Position numbers and translations under genes: made by a program. From Mytilus californianus (Eukaryota): a stretch of 64,000 nucleotides of DNA. Shown here piece after piece: positions 19,675 to 63,570 of the stretch; position 1 is the first letter of the stretch, and each line of letters begins with the position of its first letter. A model generated the notes under the pieces. That model did not search any database. It had not been told where the DNA came from and worked only from the letters and a program-made list of their open reading frames with translations. The DNA lies in contig NW_026262745.1 of NCBI RefSeq assembly GCF_021869535.1, positions 58,528,001-58,592,000 on the forward strand, given 5' to 3'.

Positions 19675-22600
19675 ATGAACGTCACCATGAGGTCTTTGTA
19701 TGTGTGTGCCGTGTTTTTGTCTTCTTTATCGTGCTCATTTGGAGCAACTATTTTAGAATATTTACAGAGCAAACCAGCCAATTTTACATATGCCGTCCAA
19801 GCTATTAAAATTGCAAATTTGACGAATGAACTTCAATCAGGAGGTATGGTTATAATTTATATAATTTTATGTTTTTCTTAATATTCTTTAACTTGGTACA
19901 CGTTTATCTTGATAATTAGTATGCGCTGCCTGCCTTATTAAACGAGCATTATGTTTTCTGGTCTGTGCGTCCGTCCGTCCGTTAGTCAGACGGTATTAGG
20001 TTTGAGTTTTTTTGTTTATGGTAGTTTATCATGAAGTTGTGGTCACACTTGGTACACATGTACACATGTTCATGTACACATGTTCAATTTAATGTGATTT
20101 TTTTTAATCATATATAAAAGTAAGATGCGGTATGATTGCCAATGAGACAACTCTCCACGAGAGACCAAATTACATAGAAGTTAACAACAAAAGGCCCCCG
20201 TACGGCCTTCAACAATGAGTTAAATTCATATATGCCAACTTTTGGTCTTGACCCCGCTCCCGTGGTTCACTAAACATAGAAATGTAATGATCTGAAATTC
20301 TCAGGTAAAATTTTTGGTTAAGGTAGTTTGAAACCTAGTACACGTGTTCATTGCTATGTAAACTATGTATGCCTTATAGTTGTGACCCCGACTTCACGGT
20401 TCACTGAACATGGACGTATGATAGTTCGAACAGGGCATGATGTCCAATTGACATACATTCTTGTTACAGGCTTGTAATAGCACTCGCAAACATGTTCAAC
20501 ACCTCTACAATCGTTTTGTGTCTGTCCCAAGTGAAAAGCGTGTAATTCAGTGGTTGTTGTAGGTTGCTTTCGGTCATGACTTTCCTCGTTTATTGATTTT
20601 AGCTTTACACATGTCGATGTGTTCTCTTGTTACTTTATTGTCATCCCGGCAGGTAGCTTTTACAGCTTACTTTACAGTACGGTTTTGCTCATTGCTGAAG
20701 GCCATACGATGACCTGCTATTGTTTACATTCTTGTCCTTTGGTCCTTGGTTAGTTGTCTCACTGGCAACAATACCGTATCGTCTTATTTGTATATTAAAG
20801 GTTGACTCCTATTTTATAAATGGACATCAAAGTGGCTGTTGTGCATCAAGAGATAACGCTGGTTTAGATGGCATTTAGTTTTATTACCTTGTGAATCAAG
20901 TCATCTTAGAGATAAATCTGTTTTAGAGGATATTTTGTATATAACCAATTAGTACTGCTCATTTCCATTGTATTTATACATTTTAAACCACACCACCATC
21001 TTTTATATCTCTTTTAGTCTTTTGTCGGTTTTCTTCTGGCATGACCATTCTTTGTCCTGTATAAGAGTCTGGATAGGGGTAATCATTTCTTTGTTATGGT
21101 TACCGTAGTTTTTCTCATTTCTTTATTTGATTTTGCACAATATTCTCTATTCTTAATATTTAGCACCTCCTTATTTTCTATTCTTTTTTTTTATTTGCCT
21201 ATTTTCTCTTTTTCTATATTTTTTAGCCAAATTTACTTTAGTTTTGGTTCATTATTCTCAATTCGGTAAACCCCATTCGGACCATCTTGGATATAGGGGT
21301 AGAAGATGTTTAAAGAGCAATAAAAACCATAGATAAGTTGGTGAAAATAGACAACATTGTCAAAAGAAAAAAGACTACAAGACAAACAGTTAAAAAAGCA
21401 CTACACAAAAACTACTGATTGAGCAAAAAGTAAAATAACAAAAATTAATACCGAACTCCAAGGAAAATTCAAACCGGAAAGTCCCTTATCAAATGGCAAA
21501 AACAAAAGCCCAAACCCATCAAACGTATGGAAAACAACTGTCATATTCCTGACTTGGTACGGGCATTTCCTTATGTATAAAATGGTGGATTAAACCTGGT
21601 TTTATAGCTAGCTAAACCTCCTACTTGATTGACAGTCGTATATAATTCCATTATATTGACAACAATGTGTGATCAAAACAAGCAAACCCAACCAAACACA
21701 TGGTATGCAATCAGGTTCTCCTGTTGAAGGGTAAACAGTTTCTGCTCCGTTAGTGGTACACTTCGTGTTGCTCATGGCAGGTAAAATTACGTTATTATGT
21801 TGCATTCGGTGATGTAACTATCCAGGAGAAGAGGACAGGATTGTAGTTTTGACAAATGAACCATATCCGTGTATGATAATACTAAAATTAACAAAAAAAA
21901 AAGCCTTTTCTCTTTGTTCTTCGTCTCCAACCAGGATCGTCCTGAACATGCATGAAATATTTGACACTGGAACTACCAATCCATCAATCTCCAGATAGGA
22001 AAATCAATTCATGTTTTTGAGACAGAGTTAACTAGTTAGCTTCGCGATTGTACATGTGTATTTTGTTGAAAGGTTATCCTACTAAGAACTTTGTTCTATT
22101 CTACCAATTTTCCATACAGTTTTGCAATTTTGTATAAAACTTTCTATAAAGTTACTTAAGTAATTTGTCGGCGTAAAAGGCAGCTCCTTTGCAGAAATGG
22201 CTTGCGTCTCCCCTTTTTCAGTTAGTGGCATAAAAAAACCCGATAGACCCGTATTAATGACAATGCTGTTATAAATAAGCAAAATTATGATAAAGTGTAT
22301 TTATGTCTGTTATTAAATCTAATTTGTCATGTCATGACACTGTTCAATGGTTTTCCAATTTGATTCCATTTTGCTCACAAGTAATTAAAACTATTTTGAT
22401 ATTTTGATAGATAAAATTATCAATATCATTAATTTATAAAGTTTAATCTATAATGATGTATATATTCAATGTACAGGACCATTTACGGCATTTATACCAA
22501 CTGATGCTGCCTTCCAGAAAATTCCAGCACCAATTTTACAACAACTTTTAAATGATCAAACTGCAATCAGAAGTTTGTTGCTTAAACATGTGACAAATGG

Positions 22601-25600
22601 AGCACTCATTTCACCATTCATCAAAAGCGGAGACAAAGAAGTATCCCTTGGCGGTACTAACTTAACTTTGACCAAAAATGGCGCTGGTGTAAGTAGCTAT
22701 ATGAAAGTAAAATAAATTGAAATTGAAATTATCTAGATATCATTAAGTTTTTTTTCTATGCACCCTGAGTTCAAATTCATTCCGTTTTGCTTTTCTCGTG
22801 TCAATTATTAAATTTTTTTTTATATCTAATGTGTATATAAATTAATAGAAAACATTGATTATCCCATAGTCACTGTGATACATGAATTTAGTGTTGAAAT
22901 AAACTACATTATCCATTCTGCATGTTCATTTACCAAAATTCTCGTCAGACGTTTTCTCAAATTATCACATCTTTAGGTTTGTCCTAACTGTTTAAAAAAA
23001 ATACAATTTTTCTGCAGCTAAATCGATTTAAAGCTTGATATATGCATCTATTGATTGATGCAGACCGCGTATATTTGTTTCAAGTCGATATCTGTCTAAT
23101 CAAATGAACGCAAAAACATTTAATGTGAACAGTACATTTCTTAAAATGTAAATAAAGGTGAGATGTACACATTGACAACAATATTGGCACAGTTCCCTGC
23201 ACCAAACGTTATTTTATTTGCATACATTTAACGTTGAAGTGAGTTTCATAGCATGCCATGTTCATGCTAATCAACGATTGCTTCCAATCGATTTGTATTT
23301 ACGATCTTGTTCATGACTTACGATCAATCTTAGTCGTAAGTTTTTTTTTTCTGAAACCGACTCCTGTGCTAAAGATAATCGTAATAAGATCGTTCTTAAT
23401 GACGATGGTTAACAATGCAATTTGAACAAGTTAATCGATCACGATCGGTTCAGATCACCTTAATTATATTTTGCATTTAATTGTTCATAGCTTATTACTA
23501 TATTGCCATATTGCCGTCGGTCTTAATGAGAACCATAGAATCGATCGCGATCGATTTACAACGATTCACAATCAAATTAAATCGATATTGATTGTATGGT
23601 ATAATGGTTTATATTTTAGGCTGTATCCGTGAATGGGGTAAAAGTTATCCTTCCTGACGTCATCGTATCCAATGGTGTTGTACAAGGAATTGATTTCGTC
23701 TTCAATGTGCCCGCTGCTAGCGTCAATATGGTTGAGTATCTTTTAAAAAATCAAGACCAATTCAAAGACCTCACTGCAGCATTAACACTTGGTGGTTTAC
23801 TGTCAACACTAGAGGGTTAGTTTGTGTTAATACACAAGAGCATTCAATATGTGCGCCATGTCAAACTAATGGTTTTTTTTTCTTTGCTTGCGAGCTGTTT
23901 TTTTGTTTGTTTGTAATAAGCCTAAATTCAAGATGATTGCCTTCAGATGTATCAAGCCGCATTTTGATTGTCTAAATAAAGCACCACGAAATAATGCTAG
24001 TAAGCATCTTTAGTGACGAAAATCACTTAGGGTAGGCGCCAATAAGACAGCAACCAAAACACACTGGGTAAGGAAAGGATTAGACCTAAATTGGTCCTTA
24101 AATTTCCAACGGGTGGAATAAATGATTAATTGTATTTTCCCAAGAAAACGAAGCTTTTTAAAAAATAAAATAGTTTTGCTTTGTAACTGAGCAGGTTTTA
24201 AAGGTGATAAATGGCGATGTATTCACTAAAATTGCCAAGTTACACAAAACAATTTAACCATTTCACTCAAATATGACGGGAAATAAGGTAAATGTGTACA
24301 TCACAATCCAACACAACCCACATTTCTTAAAAAAAGAAAAGAAGATATACATGCAGGAAGTGTCAAGTTGCTTTATTATCTACTCGCTTGCAAATATTCT
24401 TGTAATATTGTACTATTAGCCGCTAGACGAAAATCATTCATCAAGCAATCAATCAAAATTCTTGCAACAAGAATCACGAAAGATATTCACATACAATGAC
24501 TTAAAATTTTAAGAAATTTCATGTTCGTGTAGCACAACGCCTCTCACACATGTGTTCCAATTTCTTTTCTAACGAAATTCATACAAAAGTAACAAGAAAA
24601 ACAATGAATTTTTTATCAGATGTTAAGTGAAAATTCATGTTTAAAAATATATTTAAGGTAGTTACTGATTACTCATATAAAAAAAATCTAATCGAAAAGC
24701 CAAGTGTTTCCTTTCAATAGGATAAGAGCCCTAGTATATCTTTAAAATCGATGTTCGAAACAGTGGCAATGTCGCTTCACTAGCGTCGCATCGCAGAGAT
24801 GACGTTACTTCTTTTTGTTTGTTTGGTTCCAAACAATCGGTTAACACTAGCGGTCTTTCTTATTTGTATATATTGTACTCGGAGAATTAAGAGCTAGACT
24901 TTTGGTATGGATGTTTGTCTATCATTGACCTTGGATGCCTGTCTATCATTGACCTTGGGTGTCTATTTTGGTCTAATGTGTTATTGATTTGTGTCACATT
25001 GACAGTTTCTCCACATCTTTTCTGATTCATATGCATTTTCTGTTGTAGGTCCAGGACCTTTCACGTTGTTTGCACCAACGGACGCAGCGTTCACAACTTT
25101 GTCAACCTCACTACAAAGTCTAGCCTCAGACATGAATCTTTTTAAAAGTAAGATATTACAGACATCTTCAAATCTCTAAATGAGAAAGTCATTGTTATGG
25201 TAGATATTTTTATAAAAGTTATATTTGCAGCTTGTTTAAATAAGTACTGTATGGACTCATGCATGTCATGTGTGAATCTTTAGTCTAAAAAAGAGATAAT
25301 TCATGGAATTATTTGGCGGCATGCTCTATAAATTCATTTTTCATGTCAAAAGTAATTTCTTCATTTTTTTGAAATTTCGACGTCTGCAGTGCATGTACAT
25401 TGTACAGTTTACAGATCTACCGAAAACGTATCGTGAACACTTAAAATAATTAAGAAGCTTACTGTAACAAAATAACGTACAAAAGTTAATACTGCCGCTT
25501 ACTGTAACAAAATAACGTACAAAAGGCAATACTGCCGCTTACCGTAACAAAACAACGTACAAAAGATAGTTCTACCGCTTACAGTAACAAAATAACGTAC

Positions 25601-26600
25601 AAAAGGCAATACTGCCGCGTACTGTAACACAATAACTTACAGAAGGCAGTTCTGCCGCTTACTGAAACAAAATAACGTACAAAAGGCAATACTGTCGCTT
25701 ACTGTAACAAAATAATGTACAAAAGGCAATACTGCCGCTTACTGTAACAAAATAAAATACAAAAGACCAAAAACAAACACGCATGCAGTGCACAACAACA
25801 ATATAGTTCTGCCAGAAGAAAACTGTTTTTTCCTCAACAATGTTATTTCTCATATCAATTATCATAATGCAAAATGCATATATCATATTTAATCTATTTA
25901 TATAGATATCTTAAAATATCATGTCGTCAGTGGGTCTACATACGCTGCAGATCTTAAGGATGGACAAAAAGTAACAACTCTGGCCGGAAGTGCTTTTACA
26001 GTTATGAAAGCGGGCACATGTGAGTATTAGGCATACGAACTAGTGAAGGAAATACACGGATGATTTTGATTACATGAGGGTCAGATGGGAATTTTCGTTT
26101 GTGTATTTTTTAATTTTGTAGGCCATTATTCCCTAATCTTTATATTTTAGCATCCCATTATTCTCTATTTTTTATTTTCTTTTGTATATTTTTCTCTATT
26201 CTTTAAATCCCACCCAGAACCTCATACATGTATATATATATGTATATTTCGAGAAATGCATATGATTAACCTATGATTAACAAAATACGAAAATTAAAGA
26301 CTACACTTTTTTTTTACCGACACAATCATGGTAACAAAACACGTATATATAATTTGTAAAACGTTCGAATTCGCCCGAAATAACTTTTGTTTTTATCTTT
26401 AAATAGTTTAATTTTTTGTTTAAAAATCAATTGATATATTTTCGTGATACTCCAAAAAAAACCGAACCTGTTATGGAAGAATGCTTTTATATTTTTCAGC
26501 CGTCACTATTGACCACGCCCACGTTACACAGCCAGACATTCCCGTTCTCAATGGTGTTATACATGTTATTGACGGCGTACTTGTTCCAAGCACATTTTGA
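19675..26600 (+). CDS. Secreted two-FAS1 (fasciclin) domain protein, paralog A (296 aa, TGFBI/sym32-like)
   Basis: Exons 19675-19843, 22477-22688, 23620-23815, 25049-25147, 25906-26019, 26500-26600 (891 nt, phases 1,0,1,1,1). Signal peptide MNVTMRSLYVCAVFLSSLSCSFG. H1 motifs GPFTAFIPTDAAF and GPFTLFAPTDAAF, YH motif ILKYHVV, H2 motifs SNGVVQGIDFVF and LNGVIHVIDGVLVP. Confidence 0.93.
23250..23595. repeat. CGAT/ATCG-rich degenerate repeat in intron 2 of gene A
   Basis: Dense CGAT/ATCG words (e.g. TTACGATC, TAATCGATCACGATCGG, AATCGATCGCGATCGATT) in otherwise CpG-poor DNA. Confidence 0.5.
25457..25766 (+). repeat. Minisatellite, 40-bp unit x ~7.7
   Basis: GCTTACTGTAACAAAATAACGTACAAAAGGCAATACTGCC units start every 40 nt from 25457 to 25737, in intron 4 of gene A. 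Confidence 0.95.
26074..26225. mobile_element. MITE family with ATGAGGGT..ACC(C)TCAT ends and TTTCTCTATT subrepeats
   Basis: Imperfect inverted ends. Related copies at about 21065-21290, 27663-27892, 55250-55488 and 57988-58245. Confidence 0.5.
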
Positions 26601-26794
26601 TATTAAAATATGTTATATAATATTTCTAACTTTTTCTTTGTTTGATTATGTTTAAGAGCCAATTTTGTTTAATTATTATACAAGTTTATATATTATGTCA
26701 GTTTTACAAACAAAAACAAAAACATTGCAAAGTATGGAACACCGAATCCGCCGGAGCAAACCGCCGATATACTTGAATGTATACCATATGAACA

Positions 26795-27072
26795 GATAGA
26801 GAATCAGGAACCTGATGTTCAGTGGTTGTCGTTTGTTGATGTAGTTCATGAGTGTTTCTCGTTTCTCGTATTCTATACAGATTAGACCGTTGGTTTTCCT
26901 GTTTGAATGGTTTTACACTAGTCATTTTGGGGCCCTTTATAGCTTGCTGTTCGGTGTGAGCCAGGCTCCGTGTTGAAGGCCGTACTTTGACCTATAACGG
27001 TTTACTTTTACAAATAGTGACTTGGATGGAGAATTGTCTCATTGGCACTCATACCACAACTTCTTATATCTA
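26795..27072 (-). mobile_element. Abundant interspersed repeat (CCAATGAGACAACT family)
   Basis: Near-identical to 34520-34790. Partial copies at about 5563-5640, 13915-14045, 17258-17395, 20120-20220, 20690-20790, 44290-44430, 47765-47795, 50260-50360 and 54672-54705. Confidence 0.8.
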
Positions 27073-30018: not shown

Positions 30019-33000
30019 TTACAAATTCATTATTTGTGTTCTCAATGAGCTTGGAATGAGCACGTGGTTAATCATGTGGACGACTCCATTGGTGGCGCTG
30101 ATATCTGGTTTGATGACGCTTGTTGTTCCATCAACATGGACAGTTGTACCTAAAAGAAAAACAAAAATTCAGAATTTAAAGGACTATGGGTAATTTGTGT
30201 TGTTCCTACCCAAAATTAAAATAACGTCACGTGACTCACGTCATTGCTTAAATTTCCATTTTTTAGAACGTTTTTGACCAATCACGACAAATTGGTGTAC
30301 CCTTTTAAAAACATAACCTAGAATGTATTAGATTTTGAAAGTGAAAATTCCACGCAGTGAAAGGTATTCAAAAGTTTGTGAGCAACAACATAAAATGCAC
30401 TTATACAGATCCTCCAAAACTTTACAACGATAACATTGCCCGATTCTGTTTCAACCTTGATTTGAATAAAAATTACATATTTCAAACTGCACATCTCTAA
30501 TCTTAAATACCATTTAACTCATTCAAATATCTAGGGATATGTCATATGTCTGCTTGGCGGATAGTAACCTTAGACAGAGTAAACCGGTCAGTGGTACTGA
30601 CCTAGTTGTAAGCAATGAAGGGCACCATACATGTAATATTTGACCCGGACGTTCAGCATATATCATCATTATCATCCCCAAAGCTGCCAAAGAGTCTCTT
30701 AATCTTGCTACTGAGCAATTCTAATTTTAAAGGAAAATAATTTCGGAATCCACCCCATCCCTAGGAAACGTAATCGTGCGTGGCTCAGACTAAAAGAGGT
30801 ATGGTTTACGCTGTGAAGGTTGTTTTGGAATTTTCTCTTATAGACATAAACGCCAATTACTTGTAAATTCATGTTACATGCACTTTTAAATTTTGAAATA
30901 TCCCAAAAGTAGAATGTTCTTCCTAATCATTTTTTCCATCCACCTTAAGATAACCTCCATATGGAGTATGCTATATGGGACATTTAAAGCAGCAAAGGAT
31001 CCATGTTCCGTTGTTTATATACATGTACATTTGTTATTTAGCAAACACCATGCATATCCAAACAAAATCTAATGAACTTTGTCATCAAACAGTGGCGGAT
31101 CCGGGGTGGGGGGGGGGGGGGGGGGGGGGGGGGTTCCGGGGGTTGGAACCCCCTATATTTTGACGATCAATGCTTTTGAATGGGGAGATATGGTTGGAGG
31201 TTGGAACCCCCCTTCCTTTAAAAATGGCTTGATCCGCCCCTGACAAATGATTGAAAATGTCACTGCAACTAACCCGAACAATACAAACAGATAGACAAGC
31301 ACGGGGCACGTCGAGATGAATATTTATTTACTTGGCAGGACATAATCTATGTATAGATTAAGTGATCTAGGATATCTGAATAATAATTTTGATAAACCAA
31401 CAATCCAGAAAGAGTGAAACCGTGAAGTTGTGCACATACCAGAAGTTAATATTAAATACAGCATATACACTTGAAACATATAAAAGTATACACTATTATG
31501 CCCGCGTTTGTTCAGTTTACAATCTAGTACTTACCAAAGAATGAAGCTGAAATTCGCTCACGATCTGCTTCTTCTAAAGTGTGGAGGGAACCTGAGTGTA
31601 AACCGTCCTTGTAAATTGTTCCAGGTATAACATGATACAATAAGACCTCTAAAACGATACGTTATTGTCATAAAGTAGAGACGATATATCTTTTTCCATT
31701 AAAAAGATTGTTTCTTTGGTTTTTTGCTATAATTTTTTGGGGGATTTTTTTTCTGATTTCGTTTCTGTTCATTTGTTTGTTTTTATCAATATCTTTTTGA
31801 TGTTTGGTTTCGTCTTTTGCAAAATGGTTTCTTGTAATTTGACATGTATCGATTTGCTTAAGAATAAAAACATTCCGATTGTGTATGAATCATTTATTAA
31901 ATCTAATGAAAATAGCGTTTTTTTGGAACGGACAGAAATGTTAACTCAATAATATATACCAACTGTTATAGCTAGCTGGTTACGGGATAAAGTTATTCTA
32001 AATATATCTGCATATGTATGCTAGAATAACAAACAATATGTGTTGATCATTAGATATATATTTTTCAATATTTTAATACATTGACTTTTAATGTAAATTA
32101 TGTATTTTATCTTCTTTTCTCAATTCTAACGTCAGAGGAGTAATTTAAATGTTGCAGAATTTATTTTACAAGTGAAATGTTTTTTTTTTTGTACTTGGAA
32201 ATCACGCTATTACAAAAAACAATAATATGCATCTTTAATCAGATAATGTACTTTCAAGTGTATTTTTCAAACACATAGTAAGATGTTTTTCTAGTATACT
32301 TTATACACAAGTACATTTTATATATTGAATAGAAAAGGCATTTTTAAACGCATTTTATCAACTATTTGTTAGTTATTTTGTTAGCGATACATGAATGATT
32401 ACTACGGCTGTGGATTACATCTGTAATAAGAAATTTGAAAAAAATATGTGTTGTAAAGAGACGAAATGATCGAAATTTTTATTTATTAACAAATTCAGGA
32501 CCGGATCGCGCAACTTTTGGAAAAGACATACCTTGAGATAGTTTGGTATAGTTTCCTATCCTTATATGAACCTGTCAATTAACTATGAAATAAGTTTCAA
32601 AAGGTACTACCTTTACGAAAATATATTTTACTGAACAGGACACTCATTTAAAGTGTTTATGTATTTAAGAGTGACTTCAACTTTTTTTATTGTCCAGGTT
32701 CTCTTTGTTAATGAAGTACTCTCAGACTGAAACTACATATATTATACATGCAGGTTGAAGCAAATTGACTTACATTTGGTAGATCTGGTGTTATAGCATA
32801 CTTAATCATAATACAAAATATAACGAAACTTACTCTTCAGGAGATCTGGGTTAGCCAGAAGCTTGTTAACTTTGTCTCCCAAAGCTGCAAAGGCATCATT
32901 GGAAGGTGCCATCAGAGTGAAAGGACCTGCTGCAAAATAGTAAACATTTTTGTGACTTATTCGTTTGTGACGTTTCCGCCTGATTTTTTCCGGTATAAAA

Positions 33001-36000
33001 AAATATTGCCCCGATCAGACTCGACAAATTTTACAGGTGGGGGGGGGGGGGGGGGCTAGGATGCAAAATTGTATCCTGCACATTTCCTTTAGTTGTAATT
33101 TCTGTCCTGCCTTTTTAATTTTCACTCTATTCGGTCCTGCCTTTTTTTTTTACATAAATTGTCATCCTGCCTTTTTTTTTAACTCAAAACTCCTGTCCTG
33201 CCTTTTTTTCAAATTTGATCATCTTGACTTGTGACTTACAATGCGGTATTGGTTTTTCTCACTGTCAAAGATCGTACTGTGATGCGCAGCTGATTACATC
33301 CTTTTCCTTTGGTCTTTGGTGGATACTTGTCTCGTAGGCGTTCATATCGCATTTCCGTATTTCAATATAGTTATAGATTAAACAGGATATTTCTTTATAT
33401 ATTTATCATAATTATATATTATTGTATATTTCTATTATCTATGTAGCGCCCATCGTTGACTTGTAATTTATTAGATAAGACCTATTTTTTTTGTTTATTT
33501 ATCACATTTTCGATATTTCTATCATTTAGGGAGCTACCATTTGATTTTTTATGGGAGGGGGGGGGGGGGGGATTAGGATGAAATATTTTGTCCTGCATTT
33601 TTTTAAGTTGTAATCTCTGTCCTGACTTTCTATTTTTCCCTCTATTCGGTCCTGCCTTTTTTTAAAAAGTTTATCCTGACTTTTTTTTACCTAAATTGTC
33701 ATCCTGACTTTTTTTTTGTAAGCGTCTCATCCTGCCTTTTTTTTTAACTCAAAACTCCTGTCCTGCCTATTTTTTTCAAATTTCATCTTAGCAACACCCC
33801 CCCCCCCCCATAAAAATCAAATGGTAGCTCCCTTATTTGACAACCAACTTGTTTGATTTGTGAAACAATATGCACTGTGATTAATTATACCCCCGCTCAA
33901 TGGTGTTAACTCTATTTTGAAGTAAATACGAAAAATGCCCATGACATATATAAAGATATTTCCGCAAAAAGGAAAAAGAATACCGAAGGAAATAAATCGT
34001 GTGATACTGTATGGGATATATTCAGACGAAGCTTGGTGCCAAACATCAAGAAGCTATGGCGTGTAGTTGCTAAAAAAAAACATGTGACGAAAGTTTCATA
34101 AGAGCGCATGATATTTTTAAGCTGTGAATGTTTGGCAAACAGGAAGTAGAACATCGAGGATACGGAAAACGTGCCAAACATCCGGAGGCTATGGAGTGTA
34201 ATTGCTGAGATATAAAATGTGACGAAAGTTTCATATGTGTGCATAATATATTTAAGCTGTAATGTCTTTGCAAACAGGAAGTAGAACATCGAGGATGCGC
34301 AAAACGTGTTTCGCGGTATTGCATAACCAGATGAAGATAAGTGTCATACATAAGGTATTGTGTGTTAATTTATGTTTTTTGATTGAGTTAAGCCTTCCAA
34401 TTGATATTTTATAGTGTGTTTTTCTATGTTGTGATGTTATACTATTGTTTCAGAAAAGGGAGAAGGTTTGGTACCATTAAAACGTTTAATCCCGCTGCAA
34501 ATGTTTGCACCTGTCCTAAGTCAGGAATCTGATTATAGTAGTTGTCGTCTGTTTATGTAGTTCATACGTGTGACTTGTTTCTCGTTTTTATATAGATTAG
34601 ACCGTTGGTTTTTCCGTTTGAATGGTTTTACACTAGTATTTTTTTGGGGCCCTTTATAGCTTGCTGTTCGGTGTGAGCCAATGCTCCGTGTTGAAGGCCG
34701 TACCTTGACCTATAATGGTTTACTTTTATAAATTGTAACTTGGATGGAGAGTTGTCTCATTGGCACTCATACCACATCTTCCTATATCTAGATATAAAAT
34801 GTAGTGAACACGACATTGCGTTACGGACATACAGACAGAGGTGAACACCTGTGGCGTGTCCTCTTTGTAGCCGGGATATAAAAAGGAGAACCACCGTAGT
34901 TGTAATCGGGGTTATGCTAGTTTACCATAAATATATTTTATCTGACTTTTATTGGTTAAAATCTTAAGAGAATGATCTTTCAAGAATGAATCAGGCTACA
35001 TGTACGTTTGGTTTGCAGTGGTTTACAGGCTTTACATGCTTCAGAGAAGTTTGAGTTATTTACAAAACGGACGTAAAGTAATTCAAAACCATCCAGGAGC
35101 TACATATTTCGAAAATACTAACCTTGCAGGTTCTCGACAAGCCCAGCGGCCTTAGCTGCAGCTACAAGTGTGGAGAAGTTCCCATCAGCTGTCAAAACAT
35201 CAACAATACTTCCTGCTGGTGGCATCATGACGTCATGGACAATATGAACGACACCATTACTGGCCATTATGTCTGATCTAAGAATTCTAGAACCTTCAGC
35301 TGTTACATGTCTCTGGATGACAAAATATGCATGTTATATATTAAAGAGAGTAAAAAAATGCGTGACAGGATATGCACCTTTCCCAAATCCCGCCTTTTTG
35401 TAATTTTTTCTCACTTTTTTTTTCCAGATCCTACATTTTTTACCCTCTTTATCCCATATTCCCACTTTTTTACCTCCTATATTCTTCTTAAGGTGGTACA
35501 TAACACTTCAGTGAGATAACTCTGTAAAAGTCAGTTGAACGTTTTAATCACGTTCTATTGTTAAGGAAATATTTAAGCTTCTCAATGATCAAAAATAGTG
35601 GCTTGTCAAACTGCTATTTATCCAATGAAATTTATCCGATAAAATGTGTGGTTCAAGTTTTTTTCAAATTTTGATATTTTTGTCAAAGGGTCAAAGTTAA
35701 TATTTTGTCAAAATTTTATGAAAATTAAACGAGCCAAATTAATTTTAGTCAAGGTGTTTGGTACCACCTTAATCCCAAAAGCGTGTGAACCCCTCATATA
35801 TCTGTTTACATTTTGTTGAACATAGAGATATTTACGCGAAATTTCTGTTGACTCCGAAGCACATGACTAATGCAACTTGAAGGCTTAAGGATGTTCGCTC
35901 CTCTTGTTTTTGAATTTTTGCCAGATTTTCGGAATTCTCTTGTCTTATCCATGCAAATAATTTTGTCCACTAACCCCTACTTTTCTTTTCATAATTTTAT

Positions 36001-49600: not shown

Positions 49601-50063
49601 CAGAAACAGGTGATGCTCTGATTTTGCTTTGTGATTTTAAAACATCCTTTAACTGCAGTTCCCCGTTTTAGAATCTAATGAATTATAGATTTTTTTTCCT
49701 CAATCGTACACCAAAACGTTGTGATTAGCTCACAACGTCCTAAACAATAGGAATTCAACCAATGGCGTGACGTAATTTTCATTTTGAGGTACAAACAATG
49801 AAATTACCCATAATCCTTTAGATTCTGAAACGGCGAATTAAATGTCATTAAGAAAATGAATAGTACTGAAACATACCACCGACTTCAAGGATTTCAATAA
49901 TTCCAGAATTCTTCAGGACGTCAAGAGTTGTCGCGGTATATTGGCTCACATTAAGTCCTTGTACTAAATTAGAGAAAACAAATCCGCCACCATCTTGGAT
50001 GGTATCATCAGCAGCTAAAGAAACGAAAATTACAAAAATAATTAATAGACCACTAGCAGCCAT
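43614..50063 (-). CDS. Secreted two-FAS1 domain protein, paralog C (327 aa, divergent)
   Basis: Minus-strand exons 50063-49877, 47394-47177, 46642-46453, 45737-45639, 44650-44537, 43789-43614 (984 nt, phases 1,0,1,1,1). Signal peptide MAASGLLIIFVIFVSLAA. Motifs GPFTFFSPDRLAF, FIKFHTV, KNGIIHVVHDAFFPP, GPFTVFAPENTAF, VLEYHVIRG and TNGVVHKLTKLLTP. A minus-strand AATAAA lies about 55 nt after the stop. Confidence 0.9.
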
Positions 50064-56969: not shown

Positions 56970-57360
56970 GGATGTACTTACATGTACTAGGTGAAATTAA
57001 AAAATCTAGAATTTAAAATTGATAATATAAGTCAGAAGAGCATACGTTAAGAAATCAAATAAGCTAAAAATATTGATAGGTTATGGAACTCCTTTTCAAG
57101 ATATTTAATTTTAAAAATTGCGGGAAAAGCTGACTCGGACTTTCACCTTATATTTGCATTGTTATTATTTTGGTCTCAAATCGATAGAAAAGAAATCTAG
57201 AATCTGCTTAAATTTTGATAAATGACCTTTTATGAGCTATTGAAGTCTTATATGAAAAGAAAAATAGGTGTTACATGTATGGGGCAAAATATTTTACCCT
57301 GTATCGTAGGAAAAAAACAAGGAGTCCGAACATCTGACTAAAACTGACCTAAGTACATCC
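56970..57360. mobile_element. Kolobok-like MITE
   Basis: ATAA|GGATGTACTTA ... TAAGTACATCC|TTAA. The left target has one mismatch. Confidence 0.6.
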
Positions 57361-58594
57361 TTAAGTATCATTTTACCTGCATGTAAAGTTTCAAAAATAG
57401 TTCATTCATATTAAAAATTGATTGAAGTGGTTTAGATGATTTAGGAGTGTCTAATTTTCAATTTGGGCAACTGAAAATTACTTCAGTCAACAGTACCAGG
57501 GCTTTCTGTCATGCAGTCACATCTTCGAAGCAAAGAAGTTGAACGACCAGAGTGAATGCGCATGCTCCATATCAACCATTTCAAAAAGTAAAATTAGCCT
57601 ATACCGGACGGTATTGTCAAACTTGTCAAATTACTGCCGGATACCAGTCATTTTAACATTGGTTGGCATTATAGTTGACAATGCAGGGGCGGATCCAGCC
57701 ATTTTTAAAAATGGGGGTTCCAACCCAGGATAAAAGGGGGGAAGGGGGAGGAGAGGGGGGGGGGGGGGGTGGTTCCAACCATATGTCCCCATTCAAAAGC
57801 ATTGTACGTCAATAAAAAAGATGGGTTCCAACCCCCGGAACCCCCCCTTTCATTCAACCCTATTCTTCCTTTCTTCCTAAATCTGTGCGTAGGTCCTCTA
57901 CGAACATGTATTAAGAATAAGTAACACTATCTAACTATTTGTTTTGAATTCATACTTCCATGAAGTTAAACTAACACACTTATTAAGAAGGGTCTGAATA
58001 AGGTTTACAAAATAGAGATTAATGGGCCAAATCTATAGAATAGAGAATAACGGGACAACACTGCAGAAAAACAAGCCAAACAATAGAGAATAGAGAAAAA
58101 AGGCCGAAAAAATAAAGAATACAGAATAATGAGGTGATACAATATAAATGATAGAAAATACTGGGCAAAATTTATAAAGAATAGAGAAAAATGGCTTATA
58201 AAATTAAATAATACAGAATTCAAGGACCCCCTTTCAAACCCTCATGTAGTCATATATCTTCGCTCTAATTTACCATTTCAAGCTCTTGAGAATGACAATT
58301 AAATAGATATAACGAATGTGTAGATTAAAAAAAAATCTGTCTGTCTTACTTCTATACATATTATCATAAAAAACACTCTGAGAAATACCCTACATGTTTA
58401 TTGCAACGTGAATAATATTTCCTATCTCTGATGTAAGAGTACGACACGAAATCATCAATGCTTAGGTAGTTAAGACAGGTTCTTATCTCTTGGGTTCACA
58501 ACATATGGTCAAATCGAGGCGGTGTCAAAATTTGTTAAATTTGTAAAGATTATAATTTTCAGTTCACAGAGCCCCACTAAGCCATTTTGGAACA

Positions 58595-61500
58595 ATGAAG
58601 TGCTTATTAGCGTTGCTGCCCTTTATCTGTCTGGCTTCAGCCTCAGAAAATCTGGTTGACTGTGCGAACGCAGCCAATTTAACAACATTTACCAGTTTTG
58701 TCAACTCAGCTGGATTAACCGATGTACTTCGGGAACAAGGTAATTAGTATTTGCATATTCAGTTTTAATTCATATTTTTTATTATAACATTTTTTAATCG
58801 CCATGTGTTTTCGCTGATAAGAAAGATACGTCGAAAAACATGGCGATCGCAGTTCTCTACTAGATTTCTCGACCGTTAAAGGTGGAGAAAATAAGCGAAT
58901 AGGAGACGAATCAAAATCTAATTTCAATGTCTCGCCAGAAAAGCTCGACTCTTCGTTGAATGAGATTACAAAGATGAAAATTATATTTCCAGCTTTCATG
59001 ATTAAAGCTCATTAGATTATCAATTCGGCTTTAAACTGAACAATGTATGAGCATGAAATACGAATATGCTATAATTTCTCATGGACTCTCTTATAGTAAT
59101 CGCCTGTATCCGTCCGAATGATAAAGTTAGAATATCATTAAATCATTATAATTTTGTGTAATTTCTATTCTGTGAACAAATATTATCGATGTTAGACTTG
59201 AGTCGATTAGAGTTTGAAGTGTATTATAGAGATCTATAGACATCTGAATTTTTGTGTTTAAATATTCAATGTTGGCCTCTAGAGATTTGACTTGGTTTGC
59301 TTTGTTAGATATCTGTCTCACTGACATATACCAGGGATTTCCTTATAGTCATATCATCTGCATCTTTCGTCAGCCACATCGATTATCACCATACATTTAC
59401 GACCCCCCATTTACCATGTTTACAGTAATATATTTGAAATTTAAAGCCACTGTTTCGGATCTTTACGATTCATGCTTGAAAGATAACCAGTTTTGATAAA
59501 TTCTACAATTTTGTTTAACTGTAAGATACAAGTTATATAGGGAGCTAGGGGGGTGGGGTAGGATGAAAAATTATGTCCTGCATTTTTTTTAGCTGAAATC
59601 TCTGTCCTGCCTTTTTATTTTTAACTTAATCCGGCCCTGCCTTTTTTTTAATCAAACTGACTCCTGTCCTGCCTTTTTTCAAATTTCATCCTAGCCCTCC
59701 TATTAATATCAAATGGTAGCTCATTTACATTGTACGTGTACTTTTTTTTGTTGTTTTTGGTATTTTATACGATTAATGGGCATATCCTTGATCTCCTAAA
59801 TTGGAGGTTTAATAAGAAGACATACAGATACATGCATATCATGAAAGAAATACACATCTACTGTTTCTTATAGGTCCATTTACTCTAATCGTTCCAACCA
59901 ATGAAGCATTCGCTAAGCTTCCACCCGCAACAGTTGCATCCTTACAGAAGGATTCCAGTGCCCTCGCAAACGTTCTCCAGTACCATGTGGTGAAAGGAAG
60001 TATCTACAGTTGGGACATGGTTTCCGGTGAAATTCTTAGCAGTTTAAATGGCCACTACATCCGGGTCTATTCTCAAGGAAGTGTAAGTTTCAATATAAAA
60101 TGAAAATTTAAACATATATAAAAAAAATAGCGCTTTTCAAATTAAAATTCTAATAAACATCAATAAAAGTGGTGTTCATTTGATAAAATGCATATATTTA
60201 ATTGTATAACACTGCAGTATACATAGATATATGAACAATATTGCTTGGTTTTCTATCTTCTTTTTTCTTATTTTCTTTTATTCTCTCAATTGATTTTACT
60301 CCTGCCATATGTGACCAGATGTATTGATACTTTGATTAAATTTTAAGCAATAAATTTCCGTTGTAAATTCGCTAATATAAAAACCGTTTTACCTGCATAA
60401 TACATTTACATAATATATAATGATTAAAACACTGATGGACAGTTTTTTTAAGCTGTCTTTTGTTCTAAGATAGTTGTTTCTTACTAAAAAAAGGGAGGCG
60501 AAAGATTCCAAAGGGACATTCGGACTCATAAGTCGAAAATGACAACGCCATGGCTAAGATAGAAAAAGACATATAACAGTACACAAAACACAATATTGAA
60601 GACTAAAGACTGAGCACGTAGAGGTGCTCCGGAAGGGCTGAACAGATCCTGTTATACATATGGCACCCGTCATGTTGCTCATTTAAATACAAGTACGCTG
60701 ATAAATTTAATTCGGTAGGGAAAAGTGGAAGGGAATGTAGTAAAGGACTAAAAAGGGATGACAACAGATCTTTCGAAATCTTTCACAATGAATTGTGTAA
60801 AAAGTGCGCTGTATATTTAAATTGATACATTGTATTTGAAAATCATTGTCAATATTTGAAAATGTAATTAAGGGTGATCTTGATATTTAATTTCCTATAT
60901 GAATATCTCTTTTGTAGTCTCTGTATTTCAACCAAGCTAAAGTAACAAAAGTAGATCTTCAATGCTCAAACGGAGTTATCTACCTTGTTGATGAAGTTCT
61001 AAATGTGCCAGAAGGAACTATTGTTGACGTCATAAAGAACCCGGATTATAACATCAGTGGATTTATGGAATTTCTAGAGGCAGCCAAATTGACTGATGTC
61101 TTCAATCGAACTAGTATGTAAAACATCTTCTATTTATTTTAAGAATTGAATGCTTCTTTTTTGTAAATTCATTGGGGTGTAAAAGCGTTGACCGAAGTAC
61201 ATTTTGTATGAAGCACGGAAACGCTTCATTCTAAAAATGTGCGCACAATCAACGCTTTTACAACCCTATTAAATTACTAAAAGAAGCATTCAATACTTAT
61301 AATTACATTTCTTAGCTAGGATCATGATTTCAATCAAGTTTTTCTTTTATTTACCTGTGCACTTTATTGTGGGAACTCGTGTCATCATGAATATTGCATT
61401 TCATTTTGAAATTTTGAAATGAAGGTTAATTTCAGAATGACGCGAGATTGCAGTTAGCTAATCAAATAATAAAAATAACGTTATCATTATGAAACAAACA

Positions 61501-62500
61501 TGCAATGTAATTATTAAAGGGAAACAATCAACTATAGTTTTTTTTTTTAACGCAAGTACAAAAACATGAAAATATACGAACGAATAAACACATGAAAACA
61601 AAAAAAAATCAACTTTTGTTTCAATCAGTTTCCAGTTTTCCAAAAGTAAAAACATCTTATAATGGAGAAACGTTTTTCGTCATATCATTGCGTTTTTTTT
61701 TCAGTACGACGGTGACCAGTATACAGAGGTATAGTCTCAAATCGGTTCTTCTGCCATTTATATGCTCCCTTCGGCAGCATATCAATGTTGTGTCGGGGAA
61801 ATCAGCATCTGATTTTGATAATATAAGAGTTGTAATATCTGTCTTATCTTTAAGGTTCACAGAGATATACAATGTTTGTTCCATCTAATGCTGCTATCGC
61901 TAGTCTGGATGCTGATTATATCACAAAATTGAAAAGCAGCTACATTTATGCTAGACGTAAGTGAACCATTAATTGTACCTGTTACCTGTTACCTATTCTG
62001 TATATTCCACCTTTTCCAGATGAACCACTTCAGTTGGTAAATCCTCTTGAAGTGTAGAATCCCTTATCCTATATTTATTGCATATTCACATTCGTATTAA
62101 AGACTTCTTCTTTATACACTTATACACACCGCCACCACACTTATTTAAAAGTATTTAAACTGTATATACAGTCATATATTAAAATCTAAAACTTGATAGA
62201 TGCATTAAATGTCATTTTGTCCATTATCTCACTTGTGCCTCTTTCCTCATCAATAGAATATATATACATGTATCCACAATGCACATTGACTGTAAAACTT
62301 GCTCATATCAGCAAATGTCTGTTTCTCCTTTCTTATACTTATGACTACTCGTAGGATGCACATTAAAGTCCTAAACCATGCTCTTAGTATACCCCTTTCA
62401 AGAGAACCTTCTTACATACTTATTAATACTTAAGGTATTTAAATCATTTATCACAGTTACATGTACTTATGACTTAGCGACAAATACATATTTAAAATCT

Positions 62501-62531
<31 letters not shown>

Positions 62532-63570
62532 AAAATTTTCACCCATCATATAAGCTTTAATTATAACCACCTGACTGATTTGTTTGAAATATTAAAATCT
62601 ACCATCATTGTACTTAAATGTTACTGTAGTTCCGAGATATTCCGTTTTACCGCGTCTGGTTTCTTTTTACTCACAACTGAAAGTCACGTGATACCGTCAA
62701 AAATGTTTAAAGCACTGTTGGGATTAATTAATACAACATCGTCTGCATAAACACACCAACAAATGGACGAGCCGCTCTACGAGAAGTTTTCATCAGAGCA
62801 AGCGGGTTCAATCAACAATGAATAGCGTGGTCTACTATTTCAAGGGCAAATTCCCAAACAAAATTTCCGTTATATCATGTATATTTAATTTCCAAAGATA
62901 ATTGAATTAAAGACAATCAGTCGATTTTTGCTGTTATCTTTGGATTTGATATTTTTGACTCTTAGGCTAACCGTGTACAGTTTACTTGGTAATTTTTATT
63001 CCTGAAACAAGTCTAGCGAGAACTAAACTCGCTTTTTCACGGCTATTAGAACATACAATCTATCTGCAAAAAGCTATGCTGTAAATATGACCCTCTCCTT
63101 TCGGTTAGCACACAATGCCTTGTTTTGATTTTGACAAAACATTGGATTTTCGTGCCTGACGTTATAACTGAATTTGCAGCGTTAGTTGTATGTTAAACGA
63201 CGCCGAAAATCAATATGGACAGTTCTGTGGGTTTGTCTAGGAATAGCAGGAATTTCAACGATAATATAATATATAAAAGTCGAGAAATATAAGGGTTGCT
63301 AGGCACACATGTTTTTTTTAACTATCTAGGAAAAATCTAGAGGAGTTCACATATTAAGGGAAAATGTAAAATCTGAGAAGCGTACCGTACCTTCTTAATT
63401 ATATTTATTTTTATGTTGTATCGTCAGGATTCAACTGACGTCATTTTTTGTTTTAGATATTGTTGATTATCATGTTCACCCAGGAACAATTCACGAGAAG
63501 AGCTTAGACCATGCAGGAACACTGTCTACAATGTACAGGGGACATAGCATTAGTGTTACCGTTGATAGTA
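58595..63570 (+). CDS. Secreted two-FAS1 domain protein, paralog D (3'-partial, five of six exons)
   Basis: Exons 58595-58739, 59874-60082, 60918-61113, 61855-61956, 63457-63570 (phases 1,0,1,1,1). Signal peptide MKCLLALLPFICLASA. Motifs GPFTLIVPTNEAF, VLQYHVVKG, SNGVIYLVDEVLNVP, RYTMFVPSNAAI and IVDYHVHPG. The last exon is not in the window. Confidence 0.92.
61141..61310. repeat. ~170-bp imperfect palindrome in intron 3 of gene D
   Basis: AAGAATTGAATGCTTCTTTT..GGGGTGTAAAAGCGTTGA..ATGAAGC / GCTTCAT..TCAACGCTTTTACAACCC..AAAAGAAGCATTCAATACTT. Confidence 0.75.

What the first reader, a model, noticed from the sequence alone, without database searches (positions are those of the whole stretch)
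19675..63570. Quartet of small secreted two-FAS1 genes with sym32-like architecture
Seen: four genes of about 300 aa, each a signal peptide plus two FAS1 domains, with identical intron phases (1,0,1,1,1) and an invariant 114-nt exon 5, but highly diverged proteins and mixed orientation (+,-,-,+). Established: vertebrate TGFBI and periostin have four FAS1 domains plus an EMI domain, while the two-FAS1 secreted form resembles sym32, the symbiosis-enhanced ~32-kDa protein of the anemone Anthopleura, and microbial FAS1 proteins such as MPB70 and Nex18 are also small and secreted. Inference: this may be an old lineage-specific, diversified adhesion or recognition cluster acting in microbe recognition, shell/byssus matrix or haemocyte adhesion.
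Basis: partly seen in the sequence, partly recalled or inferred. Interest (0 to 1): 0.75.

Follow-up and report, generated by a model that had tools for sequence, protein, structure and literature searches.

The report
Conserved mussel cluster of two-FAS1 genes
Four real mussel genes each make a small secreted protein that looks like half of the human matrix proteins TGFBI and periostin; three of them form a gene trio also found in oysters and pearl oysters, the genes are already annotated in public databases, and what they do is still untested.

Summary
The window (Mytilus californianus) carries four six-exon genes in orientation +,-,-,+. Each encodes a signal peptide plus two FAS1 domains (296, 303, 327 and 297 aa). 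All have intron phases 1,0,1,1,1 and a 114-nt exon 5, and they are only 21-36% identical to each other. One correction: exon 6 of the fourth gene lies 755-882 bases past the window's end.

My models equal RefSeq proteins for A, B and D ("periostin-like", "TGFBI ig-h3-like"). RefSeq's model of C lacks the first 92 residues.

This is not a recently diversifying, mussel-only cluster. A(+), B(-) and D(+) have one-to-one orthologues in the same order and orientation in two oysters and a pearl oyster, with the same exon plan in the two oyster genes I checked. C is an extra, strongly diverged copy in the B group. All four are under purifying selection among Mytilus species (dN/dS 0.03-0.20).

A model of D's 99%-identical orthologue superposes as a domain pair on human TGFBI (TM 0.75). 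D is spliced as predicted and abundant in RNA contigs of related mussels.

The likeliest role is a soluble matrix or adhesion protein, but that is inference. The sym32 likeness is architecture only. The scan had noted this stretch before (s1-337821); its duplicated GPCR-FAS1 idea is not supported.

The parts
19675..19843 (+). Gene A exon 1 (start codon, signal peptide, start of FAS1-1)
   Evidence: ATG at 19675, donor AG|GTATGG in phase 1. The whole model equals XP_052076429.1, 296 aa.
22477..22688 (+). Gene A exon 2 (FAS1-1 core)
   Evidence: Pfam PF02469 positions 25-91, E 5e-12. Splice sites.
23620..23815 (+). Gene A exon 3 (end of FAS1-1, linker, start of FAS1-2)
   Evidence: Pfam positions 95-121. 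Splice sites.
25049..25147 (+). Gene A exon 4 (FAS1-2, GPFT motif)
   Evidence: Pfam positions 24-48. Splice sites.
25906..26019 (+). Gene A exon 5 (114 nt, FAS1-2 YH region)
   Evidence: Pfam positions 57-89. 114 nt.
26500..26600 (+). Gene A exon 6 (end of FAS1-2, stop codon)
   Evidence: Pfam positions 95-123. Stop TGA.
38225..38387 (-). Gene B exon 1 (signal peptide)
   Evidence: The whole model equals XP_052077402.1, 303 aa.
36418..36635 (-). Gene B exon 2 (FAS1-1 core)
   Evidence: Genome scan PF02469, 58 bits. Splice sites.
35123..35312 (-). Gene B exon 3
32834..32929 (-). Gene B exon 4
31535..31648 (-). Gene B exon 5 (114 nt)
30019..30149 (-). Gene B exon 6 (stop codon)
   Evidence: Genome scan PF02469 positions 88-123..
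49877..50063 (-). Gene C exon 1 (signal peptide; missing from the RefSeq model of this species)
   Evidence: Exon 1 aligns over its full length, ungapped, to M. trossulus DNA at 91%. RefSeq XP_052076407.1 starts at residue 93.
47177..47394 (-). Gene C exon 2 (FAS1-1 core)
   Evidence: Genome scan PF02469, 39 bits..
46453..46642 (-). Gene C exon 3
45639..45737 (-). Gene C exon 4
44537..44650 (-). Gene C exon 5 (114 nt)
43614..43789 (-). Gene C exon 6 (longer C-terminal tail, stop codon)
   Evidence: The whole model is 95% identical to XP_063413496.1 over 327 aa.
58595..58739 (+). Gene D exon 1 (signal peptide)
   Evidence: RNA contigs join 58739 to 59874. The whole model equals XP_052077323.1.
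59874..60082 (+). Gene D exon 2 (FAS1-1 core)
   Evidence: Genome scan PF02469, 65 bits. RNA joint 60082|60918.
60918..61113 (+). Gene D exon 3
   Evidence: RNA joint 61113|61855 in runs X1 and X4.
61855..61956 (+). Gene D exon 4
   Evidence: RNA joint 61956|63457.
63457..63570 (+). Gene D exon 5 (114 nt). Exon 6 is outside the window at L001:755-882.
   Evidence: Loose ends of the RNA contigs after 63570 read the start of exon 6.

Best explanation
What it is. The stretch holds four paralogous genes of Mytilus californianus. Each encodes a soluble secreted protein of about 29-35 kDa made of a signal peptide and one tandem pair of FAS1 (fasciclin) domains. In effect each protein is one half of a TGFBI/periostin-type protein, without the N-terminal cysteine-rich EMI domain.

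How it arose. A(+), B(-) and D(+) form an old gene trio. Its order, orientation and six-exon plan (phases 1,0,1,1,1; 114-nt exon 5) were already present in the common ancestor of mussels, oysters and pearl oysters. C is an extra copy in the B group. It sits between B and D in the same orientation as B. It changed greatly at some early time: its stem branch is about 2 changes per site, its pI is basic, both Asp-Ile motifs are lost and its tail is longer. It has been conserved since. The quartet is one of several clusters of a large FAS1 family in this genome.

How it most likely works (inferred, not shown). The proteins are secreted into the extracellular matrix, haemolymph or pallial space. 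There the FAS1 pair would bridge cell-surface receptors (integrins in vertebrates) and matrix components, modulating adhesion and matrix assembly as TGFBI and periostin do.

Confidence. About 0.95 for identity, structure and evolutionary history; about 0.4 for the adhesion mechanism.
For: Gene models, phases and exon lengths.

Agreement with public proteins: 100% identity to RefSeq for A, B and D; 95% over the full length for C.

Domain content: two Pfam Fasciclin stretches and nothing else.

Secretion: signal-peptide-like N-termini, no later membrane segment and no hydrophobic tail.

RNA: spliced contigs confirm introns 1-4 of D, at contig depth 4312 in run X1 and 335 in run X2. Short contigs that carry the complete coding sequence exist for C, D and B relatives and for the oyster genes.

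Synteny:
- M. gigas and C. angulata have HSP70, A'(289 aa), B'(303 aa), D'(307 aa), lipocalin.
- Pinctada has A' exon 6, then B'(-), then D'(+).
- Three other Mytilus species keep A, B, C, D in the same order.

Exon plan: oyster A' has 157/215/190/96/114/98 nt with phases 1,0,1,1,1 and equals XP_011428469.2. In oyster B', tblastn hits leave a 38-residue (114-nt) gap where exon 5 is expected.

Tree: A group 99/99, D group 100/100, B+C+oyster B' 100/98, all animal sequences 99/97 apart from bacterial ones.

Selection: dN/dS is A 0.20, B 0.08-0.12, C 0.07, D 0.03.

Structure: AlphaFold model of the 99%-identical D orthologue has pLDDT 90.7 and pTM 0.82. Both domains superpose on human TGFBI 5nv6 (TMq 0.75, 279 columns) and periostin 5yjh (0.71). 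By sequence, B aligns to TGFBI 124-378 at E 1.5e-59.

Family size: 25 exon-2-type FAS1 matches in the genome, with about 11 paralogues in 150 kb on C132.
Against: - No functional experiment exists for any bivalve member. One paper states that the function of fasciclin in oysters is unknown (PMC9498863).
- None of the four has an RGD motif. Asp-Ile motifs before the NGV(V/I)H box are present in A, B and D but are general FAS1 features, and C has lost them.
- Integrin binding is extrapolated from vertebrates.
- The tissue of expression is unknown because run labels are coded. The RNA run from the assembly's own study showed no reads on D exons in the 6% of the run that was read.
- Transcription of A was not shown here.
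- The timing of the B/C duplication is unresolved (AU p 0.375; alternative branch support 62/9).
Confidence: 0.6

Rival explanations
1. Immune or microbe-recognition role, as proposed for sym32. The proteins would be released by haemocytes or epithelia and bind microbes or mark the host-microbe interface.
For: - A TGFBI ig-h3-like gene is a strong marker of oyster hyalinocytes (118-fold; bioRxiv 10.64898/2026.05.15.723513).
- Sym32 has the same signal-peptide plus two-FAS1 layout and sits at the symbiosome membrane (PMC3141003).
- The family is large in this genome.
Against: - Whole-gene dN/dS of 0.03-0.20 and one-to-one orthologues kept since before the mussel-oyster split do not look like an arms-race recognition family.
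- It is not known whether the oyster haemocyte marker is an orthologue of A, B or D.
- Sym32 is described as cnidarian-specific, and its table entry lists a membrane segment (PMC3141003). None is seen in these four proteins.
Confidence: 0.15
2. Structural or regulatory component of a secreted biomaterial such as larval or adult shell matrix, periostracum or byssus.
For: - D has very high contig depth in one run (4312).
- Transcripts with 0-2 differing letters per aligned piece (run table: 99% or more alike) occur in a poly-A RNA library of seawater, which would fit planktonic larvae.
- 'Periostin' is listed among adhesion, matrix and shell-formation markers in M. californianus larvae (PMC8696127).
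Against: - Tissue labels were not available.
- The gene in the larval paper was not matched to this locus.
- The proteins have none of the low-complexity or acidic repeat composition usual in shell or byssus proteins: pI 5.7-8.6, globular, high pLDDT throughout.
Confidence: 0.15
3. Carrier of a small hydrophobic ligand, as in the carotenoid-binding FAS1 proteins (AstaP) of green algae.
For: AstaP-type structures are among the structural and sequence matches (8c18, 22iy). Single FAS1 domains can hold carotenoids (bioRxiv 10.1101/2022.12.26.521925, listed).
Against: The matches to AstaP are far weaker than to TGFBI or periostin (TMq 0.39 against 0.75; E 1e-11 against 1e-59). The two-domain geometry is that of TGFBI.
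Confidence: 0.05
4. A recent, mussel-specific tandem expansion that is diversifying quickly. This is the strong reading of the first reader's 'lineage-specific diversified cluster'.
For: Low pairwise identity (21-36%) between neighbouring genes. C has a very long stem branch.
Against: A, B and D each have orthologues in oysters in conserved order. All four are under purifying selection among Mytilus species. All exons align ungapped to the congeners' DNA, so exon lengths are unchanged among Mytilus species.
Confidence: 0.05

Closest known systems
Human TGFBI (beta ig-h3) and periostin (PDB 5nv6, 5yjh)
   Same: Secreted, with the same FAS1 fold. The two-domain model superposes as a pair (TMq 0.75 and 0.71). 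Sequence E-value is 1.5e-59 over a FAS1-1/2 or FAS1-3/4 pair. The H1 (GPFT), YH and H2 (NGV[VI]H) boxes are present.
   Different: Two FAS1 domains, not four. No EMI/cysteine-rich N-terminal domain, no RGD, no periostin-type C-terminal region. The mature proteins are nearly cysteine-free. Orthology to the vertebrate genes was not tested.
Oyster and pearl-oyster two-FAS1 genes: XP_011428469 (289 aa), XP_011428468 (303 aa), XP_065932601 / XP_052675650 (307 aa), Pinctada KAK3100441 (302 aa)
   Same: One-to-one orthologues of A, B and D at 42%, 60% and 56-59% identity. Same order and orientation. Oyster A' was shown to have the same six-exon plan with a 114-nt exon 5, and the tblastn hits of oyster B' fit it.
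   Different: The oyster and pearl-oyster loci read have no C-type gene and no GPCR between B' and D', which there lie about 1 kb apart head to head. The flanking genes differ: HSP70 and lipocalin in oysters, a PIH1_CS gene and a Met-rich protein gene in Mytilus.
Sym32 of sea anemones (Anthopleura elegantissima, Anemonia viridis)
   Same: Signal peptide plus two adjacent FAS1 domains, about 32 kDa (PMC3141003).
   Different: Described as a cnidarian-specific gene that corresponds to the first half of a four-FAS1 gene. It is induced by symbiosis, membrane-associated, and has a proposed gamma-carboxylation site. None of this was shown here, and no membrane segment is seen in A-D.
Bacterial FAS1 proteins (MPB70/MPT70, Rhodobacter Fdp, multi-FAS1 surface proteins)
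   Same: Same domain. Two- and three-FAS1 bacterial proteins are 32-42% identical to A-D, which is as close as the four are to each other.
   Different: MPB70 and Fdp have one FAS1 domain. The mussel genes have five spliceosomal introns and conserved animal synteny, and all animal sequences form one clade apart from the bacterial ones (99/97). Transfer from bacteria is therefore not indicated.
Insect Fasciclin I (PDB 1o70)
   Same: Tandem FAS1 domains with a role in cell adhesion.
   Different: Four FAS1 domains and a lipid anchor. Only one domain superposes on the FAS1 3-4 pair of 1o70 (TMq 0.43, rmsd 16.6), so the inter-domain geometry differs.

Membership tests
FAS1 / fasciclin domain family (Pfam PF02469) | Significant match to the Fasciclin profile over the whole domain | tested here: met
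   Two stretches per protein, E 1e-44 to 7e-65 on full-length Mytilus orthologues 94-99% identical to A-D. Exon-wise matches in the window.
FAS1 / fasciclin domain family (Pfam PF02469) | FAS1 fold | tested here: met
   AlphaFold model has pLDDT 90.7. Single-domain matches reach TMt 0.92 to TGFBI FAS1-4 (2vxp).
TGFBI / periostin (vertebrate four-FAS1 matricellular proteins) | N-terminal EMI (cysteine-rich) domain | tested here: not met
   Pfam finds only Fasciclin. There are 0-2 cysteines after the signal peptide.
TGFBI / periostin (vertebrate four-FAS1 matricellular proteins) | Four tandem FAS1 domains | tested here: not met
   Two domains in 296-327 aa.
TGFBI / periostin (vertebrate four-FAS1 matricellular proteins) | Inter-domain geometry of a FAS1 pair | tested here: met
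   TMq 0.75 and rmsd 3.6 over 279 columns to 5nv6_A.
TGFBI / periostin (vertebrate four-FAS1 matricellular proteins) | Integrin-dependent cell adhesion | not testable with these tools
   No RGD. Asp-Ile motifs are present in A, B and D only. Needs binding and adhesion assays.
Sym32 (cnidarian) | Signal peptide plus exactly two FAS1 domains | tested here: met
   The sym32 architecture is taken from PMC3141003.
Sym32 (cnidarian) | Common descent with sym32 to the exclusion of other FAS1 proteins | not tested
   No sym32 sequence was available by reference. The literature calls it cnidarian-specific.
Sym32 (cnidarian) | Symbiosis-enhanced expression at a host-symbiont membrane | not testable with these tools
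   Needs expression and localisation data.
Pteriomorph A-B-D two-FAS1 trio (defined here) | Reciprocal orthology of A, B and D with neighbouring genes in oysters and pearl oyster, in the same order and orientation | tested here: met
   Tree groups 99/99, 100/98 and 100/100. Loci L018, L019 and L026.
Pteriomorph A-B-D two-FAS1 trio (defined here) | Six exons, phases 1,0,1,1,1, exon 5 of 114 nt | tested here: met
   Mussel A-D and oyster A'. For oyster B', tblastn hits leave a 38-residue gap where exon 5 is expected. Oyster D' may have exons 3 and 4 fused; this was not resolved.

The most novel reading that the evidence does not exclude
The A(+)-B(-)-D(+) trio may be a co-regulated unit that has been held together since before mussels and oysters diverged. 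On this reading the roughly 1-kb head-to-head B-D spacer of oysters and pearl oysters acts as a shared two-way promoter. In the mussel lineage it was split by a B duplicate (C) that acquired a new function as a basic protein lacking the Asp-Ile motifs, and by an intronless GPCR. The trio would then mark a specific secretory cell type or larval matrix programme of pteriomorph bivalves.
Probability: 0.2. Interest if true: 0.45.

Novelty: new member of a known kind. Interest (0 to 1): 0.3.

Why it matters
FAS1 proteins labelled 'TGFBI ig-h3-like' or 'periostin-like' keep appearing in bivalve expression and proteome lists. Examples are larvae under acidification or copper, a haemocyte cell type, and the crystalline style. 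The names come from automatic annotation, and nobody knows which gene is which or what they do.

This work gives a usable framework:
- three old orthogroups (A, B/C and D) with conserved neighbourhood in mussels, oysters and pearl oysters;
- one strongly diverged mussel copy (C);
- evidence that all four are constrained rather than fast-evolving.

It also corrects one RefSeq model: C lacks its signal-peptide exon and part of exon 2. It shows that the names overstate the likeness to vertebrate TGFBI and periostin, since these proteins are half-size and lack the EMI domain. The result is useful groundwork but not surprising, because the domain, the fold and the gene predictions were already public.

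Tried and rejected
1. Transfer from bacteria. A is as close to bacterial FAS1 proteins (37-42%) as to its oyster orthologue (42%). I rejected this: the gene has five spliceosomal introns and conserved animal synteny, and all animal sequences form one clade (99/97) apart from the bacterial ones.

2. tblastn of the GPCR at 52794-53870 finds no second copy in the window or its 10-kb flanks.

3. The big representative search with a profile of the four exon-2 translations. Its top 150 were all long multi-FAS1 proteins, because scores add up over domains, so it gave no orthologues. It did show 16,431 proteins at E up to 0.001.

4. Word searches with full-size queries were likewise swamped by three-FAS1 bacterial proteins. 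A 190-aa first row capped candidate length at 332 aa and brought out the true orthologues.

5. Long open frames in the C132 paralogues, which the genome scan suggested, were not confirmed by a stop-to-stop listing.

7. Shared flanking genes between oyster and mussel: none found in window plus flanks.

8. AU tests could not date the B/C duplication, and neither supported nor rejected a single clade for the four genes with their orthologues (p 0.375 and 0.198).

9. Rule compliance. Joined spliced models were never sent to a search tool. Searches used exon translations by reference or public full-length proteins by id. Exons were joined only inside sandbox scripts, for alignment, tree and dN/dS.
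Full report
WHERE THE WINDOW LIES
The window is G000:C165:58528001-58592000 of a 1.65-Gb, 175-contig assembly. The species is Mytilus californianus. RefSeq proteins of that species lie on contigs of exactly the lengths of C165 (99,871,944) and C132 (120,330,192). My gene models reproduce three of those proteins residue for residue. G+C is about 32% throughout, and the window contains no N.

THE OBSERVATION
A six-frame self-comparison showed four sets of related coding pieces. I listed GT donors and AG acceptors with their phases around each piece and built four six-exon models with GT-AG at all 20 introns.

| Gene | Strand | Span | Exon lengths (nt) | Protein |
|---|---|---|---|---|
| A | + | 19675-26600 | 169/212/196/99/114/101 | 296 aa |
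| B | - | 38387-30019 | 163/218/190/96/114/131 | 303 aa |
| C | - | 50063-43614 | 187/218/190/99/114/176 | 327 aa |
| D | + | 58595-63570, plus exon 6 at 64755-64882 | 145/209/196/102/114/128 | 297 aa |

- Exon 6 of D is outside the window (L001:755-882).
- Intron phases are 1,0,1,1,1 in all four genes, and exon 5 is 114 nt in all four.
- Pairwise identity is 21-36%.
- Pfam Fasciclin (PF02469) matches the exons of A as follows: exon 2 covers profile positions 25-91, exon 3 covers 95-121, exon 4 covers 24-48, exon 5 covers 57-89 and exon 6 covers 95-123. That is two domains split over exons 1-3 and 3-6.

The only omission is that the last gene is cut off by the window's end.

INDEPENDENT CHECKS OF THE MODELS
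- A, B and D equal XP_052076429.1 (periostin-like), XP_052077402.1 and XP_052077323.1 (both TGFBI ig-h3-like) at 100% over their full length.
- C is 95% identical over all 327 aa to M. trossulus XP_063413496.1. M. edulis and M. galloprovincialis also have 327-aa forms. The M. californianus RefSeq model XP_052076407.1 ('sll1735-like', 235 aa) covers only residues 93-327. Yet exon 1, with its signal peptide, is intact in the window and aligns over its full length, ungapped, to M. trossulus DNA at 91%.
- For D, spliced contigs of three sequencing runs join 58739|59874, 60082|60918, 61113|61855 and 61956|63457. Their loose ends after 63570 read the beginning of exon 6.
- Contig depth for D was 4312 in run X1 and 335 in run X2, both from related species. 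Two contigs of a poly-A RNA library of seawater were 99% or more alike (0-2 differing letters per aligned piece).
- The RNA run from the assembly's own study had no reads on D exons in the 6% of it that was read. Expression is therefore strong somewhere but not everywhere. Tissue labels were coded.
- Complete coding sequences of C (327 aa on a 1092-nt contig), B (302 aa on 956 nt) and D (310 aa on 1157 nt) occur on contigs far shorter than the genes, so these are spliced RNAs.
- I found no such evidence for A.

WHAT THE PROTEINS ARE
- Full-length Mytilus orthologues 94-99% identical to A-D carry exactly two Fasciclin stretches and no other Pfam family.
- Each protein begins with a hydrophobic core typical of a signal peptide. 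None has a later membrane-like segment or a hydrophobic C-terminal tail.
- The mature proteins are about 29-35 kDa, nearly free of cysteine, and have no RGD.
- pI is 5.7-6.4 for A, B and D but 8.6 for C. C has also lost the Asp-Ile motifs before the NGV(V/I)H box and has a longer tail.
- By sequence, the closest solved structures are human TGFBI (B 43-298 against TGFBI 124-378, E 1.5e-59) and periostin.
- An AlphaFold model of P0235, the 99%-identical D orthologue, has pLDDT 90.7 and pTM 0.82.
- Both of its domains superpose together on TGFBI 5nv6 (TMq 0.75, rmsd 3.6 over 279 columns) and on periostin 5yjh (0.71). On the Fasciclin I pair 1o70 only one domain fits (0.43).

In shape, then, these proteins are one FAS1 pair of a TGFBI/periostin-type protein, without the EMI domain and without the second pair.

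HISTORY
In M. trossulus, M. edulis and M. galloprovincialis the four genes keep the same order and orientation.

In Magallana gigas and Crassostrea angulata three two-FAS1 genes lie within 11 kb: 289 aa (+), 303 aa (-), 307 aa (+). They are flanked by HSP70 and a lipocalin gene.
- Exon by exon, the 289-aa gene is closest to A, the 303-aa gene to B (60% over the full length) and the 307-aa gene to D (56-59%).
- My independent model of the 289-aa gene equals XP_011428469.2. Its exons are 157/215/190/96/114/98 nt with phases 1,0,1,1,1.
- For the 303-aa gene, tblastn hits cover the expected exons and leave a 38-residue (114-nt) gap where exon 5 should be.

In Pinctada imbricata the same A'(+), B'(-), D'(+) arrangement is seen.

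A maximum-likelihood tree of 31 two-FAS1 units gave these groups:
- A group 99/99;
- D group 100/100;
- B + C + oyster B' 100/98;
- all animal sequences 99/97 apart from the bacterial ones.

C sits on a stem of 1.96 changes per site. The C132 cluster and a Tegillarca protein are the nearest neighbours of the B/C group (87/81).

AU tests do not decide whether C arose after or before the mussel-oyster split (p 0.375; the alternative branch has support 62/9). They neither support nor reject a single clade for the four genes with their orthologues (p 0.198). C lies between B and D, in B's orientation, in the Mytilus genomes examined; no such gene lies there in the oyster and pearl-oyster loci read. 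That position favours a tandem duplication of B in the mussel lineage.

SELECTION
Nei-Gojobori estimates against other Mytilus species, from exon alignments without gaps and without stops, were A 0.20, B 0.08-0.12, C 0.07 and D 0.03, at dS 0.21-0.34. The low identity between the four genes therefore reflects age, not present rapid change.

THE WIDER FAMILY
- The genome scan gave 52 FAS1 exon matches. Twenty-five are of the exon-2 type (profile positions about 24 to 93 in one exon), at about eleven places on seven contigs. Only the four genes described here lie on C165.
- A 150-kb stretch of C132 holds about eleven paralogues that match B at 38-49% per exon.
- Other loci have a different exon pattern and may be the four-FAS1 genes. 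I could not fetch them.

FUNCTION
Nothing here or in the papers I read tests function.
- One paper states that the role of fasciclin in oysters is unknown (PMC9498863).
- A TGFBI-like gene marks oyster hyalinocytes (bioRxiv 10.64898/2026.05.15.723513).
- 'Periostin' is among matrix, adhesion and shell markers in M. californianus larvae (PMC8696127).
- FAS1 proteins occur in the shipworm crystalline-style proteome (PMC8561940).

None of these could be tied to A-D.

From fold, secretion and conservation, I take the most likely mechanism to be a soluble matricellular protein. Its FAS1 pair would link cell-surface receptors to matrix components, as in TGFBI and periostin. This is an inference, at about 0.4. 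Rivals are an immune or recognition role, a biomaterial component, and a ligand carrier.

COMPARISON WITH SYM32
Sym32 has the same layout of a signal peptide plus two FasI domains. It is described as cnidarian-specific, as corresponding to the first half of a four-domain gene, and as membrane-associated (PMC3141003). I had no sym32 sequence by reference, so common descent was not tested. The likeness is one of architecture.

METHOD NOTE
Searches used exon translations by reference or public proteins by id. Exons were joined only in sandbox scripts.

The cluster listing mixes unrelated neighbours. For example, the 282-aa Met-rich proteins appear with A's orthologues, and the oyster 289-aa protein appears with the 307-aa ones. 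I therefore relied on my own alignments, not on cluster membership.

VERDICT
It is partly wrong: they are not mussel-specific and not rapidly diversifying. The genes are already in RefSeq under automatic names. What is new is the orthology and synteny framework and the diverged copy C. Interest is modest.

Noticed in passing
window 52794-53870 (-); likely ATG at 53852: Intronless rhodopsin-type GPCR (Pfam 7tm_1, E 1e-18) between genes C and D. A 90%-identical copy lies at the same place in M. trossulus (L022:7364-8431), where no gene is called. The oyster and pearl-oyster B'-D' spacers (0.9-1.2 kb) are too short to hold it. There is no second copy in the window.
   Followed up: partly
window 49877-50063 (-) and 47177-47394 (-): RefSeq's M. 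californianus model of gene C (XP_052076407.1, 235 aa, 'sll1735-like') starts at an internal Met in exon 2. It omits the intact signal-peptide exon that the 327-aa models of three other Mytilus species include.
   Followed up: yes
window 14288-15130 (+); L023:6075-6923; L024:7105-7953: The Met-rich secreted protein gene noted earlier (s1-337785) is called as a 282-aa gene at the same place upstream of A in M. galloprovincialis and M. edulis, next to a PIH1_CS gene.
   Followed up: partly
G000:C132:92865001-93015000 (L003-L017): A second, larger cluster of about eleven FAS1 paralogues lies in 150 kb. RefSeq's 438-aa 'periostin-like' protein there (P0221) looks like a fusion of one and a half genes. 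Long open frames at 120998-124037 of the joined stretch (L015:998-4037) look by eye like a retrotransposon; this was not checked.
   Followed up: partly
window 25344-25910 (intron 4 of gene A), 16533-18673, 10421-11185, 4379-5100 versus 6290-6920: Tandem or dispersed repeats showed up as self-matches in the six-frame comparison. One is a minisatellite-like array inside intron 4 of gene A. Another is a pair of about 550-bp stretches, 80-98% identical at the translated level, lying 1.8 kb apart.
   Followed up: no
window 58500-64000, run X4: A poly-A RNA library labelled 'seawater metagenome' holds spliced gene D contigs with 0-2 differing letters per aligned piece. This would fit mussel larvae or shed cells in the water sample.
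   Followed up: no
(tool output): The 90% clusters returned by the listing of cluster members contain proteins that are plainly unrelated or only 30-40% identical. Examples are the 282-aa Met-rich proteins with A's orthologues, and the oyster 289-aa protein with the 307-aa ones. Cluster membership should not be read as orthology.
   Followed up: partly
L018:7407-7706; L019:10828-11451: In the oyster D orthologue, exons 3 and 4 may be fused, because one tblastn hit spans D residues 119-218. If so, intron 3 was lost there. I did not resolve this.
   Followed up: no
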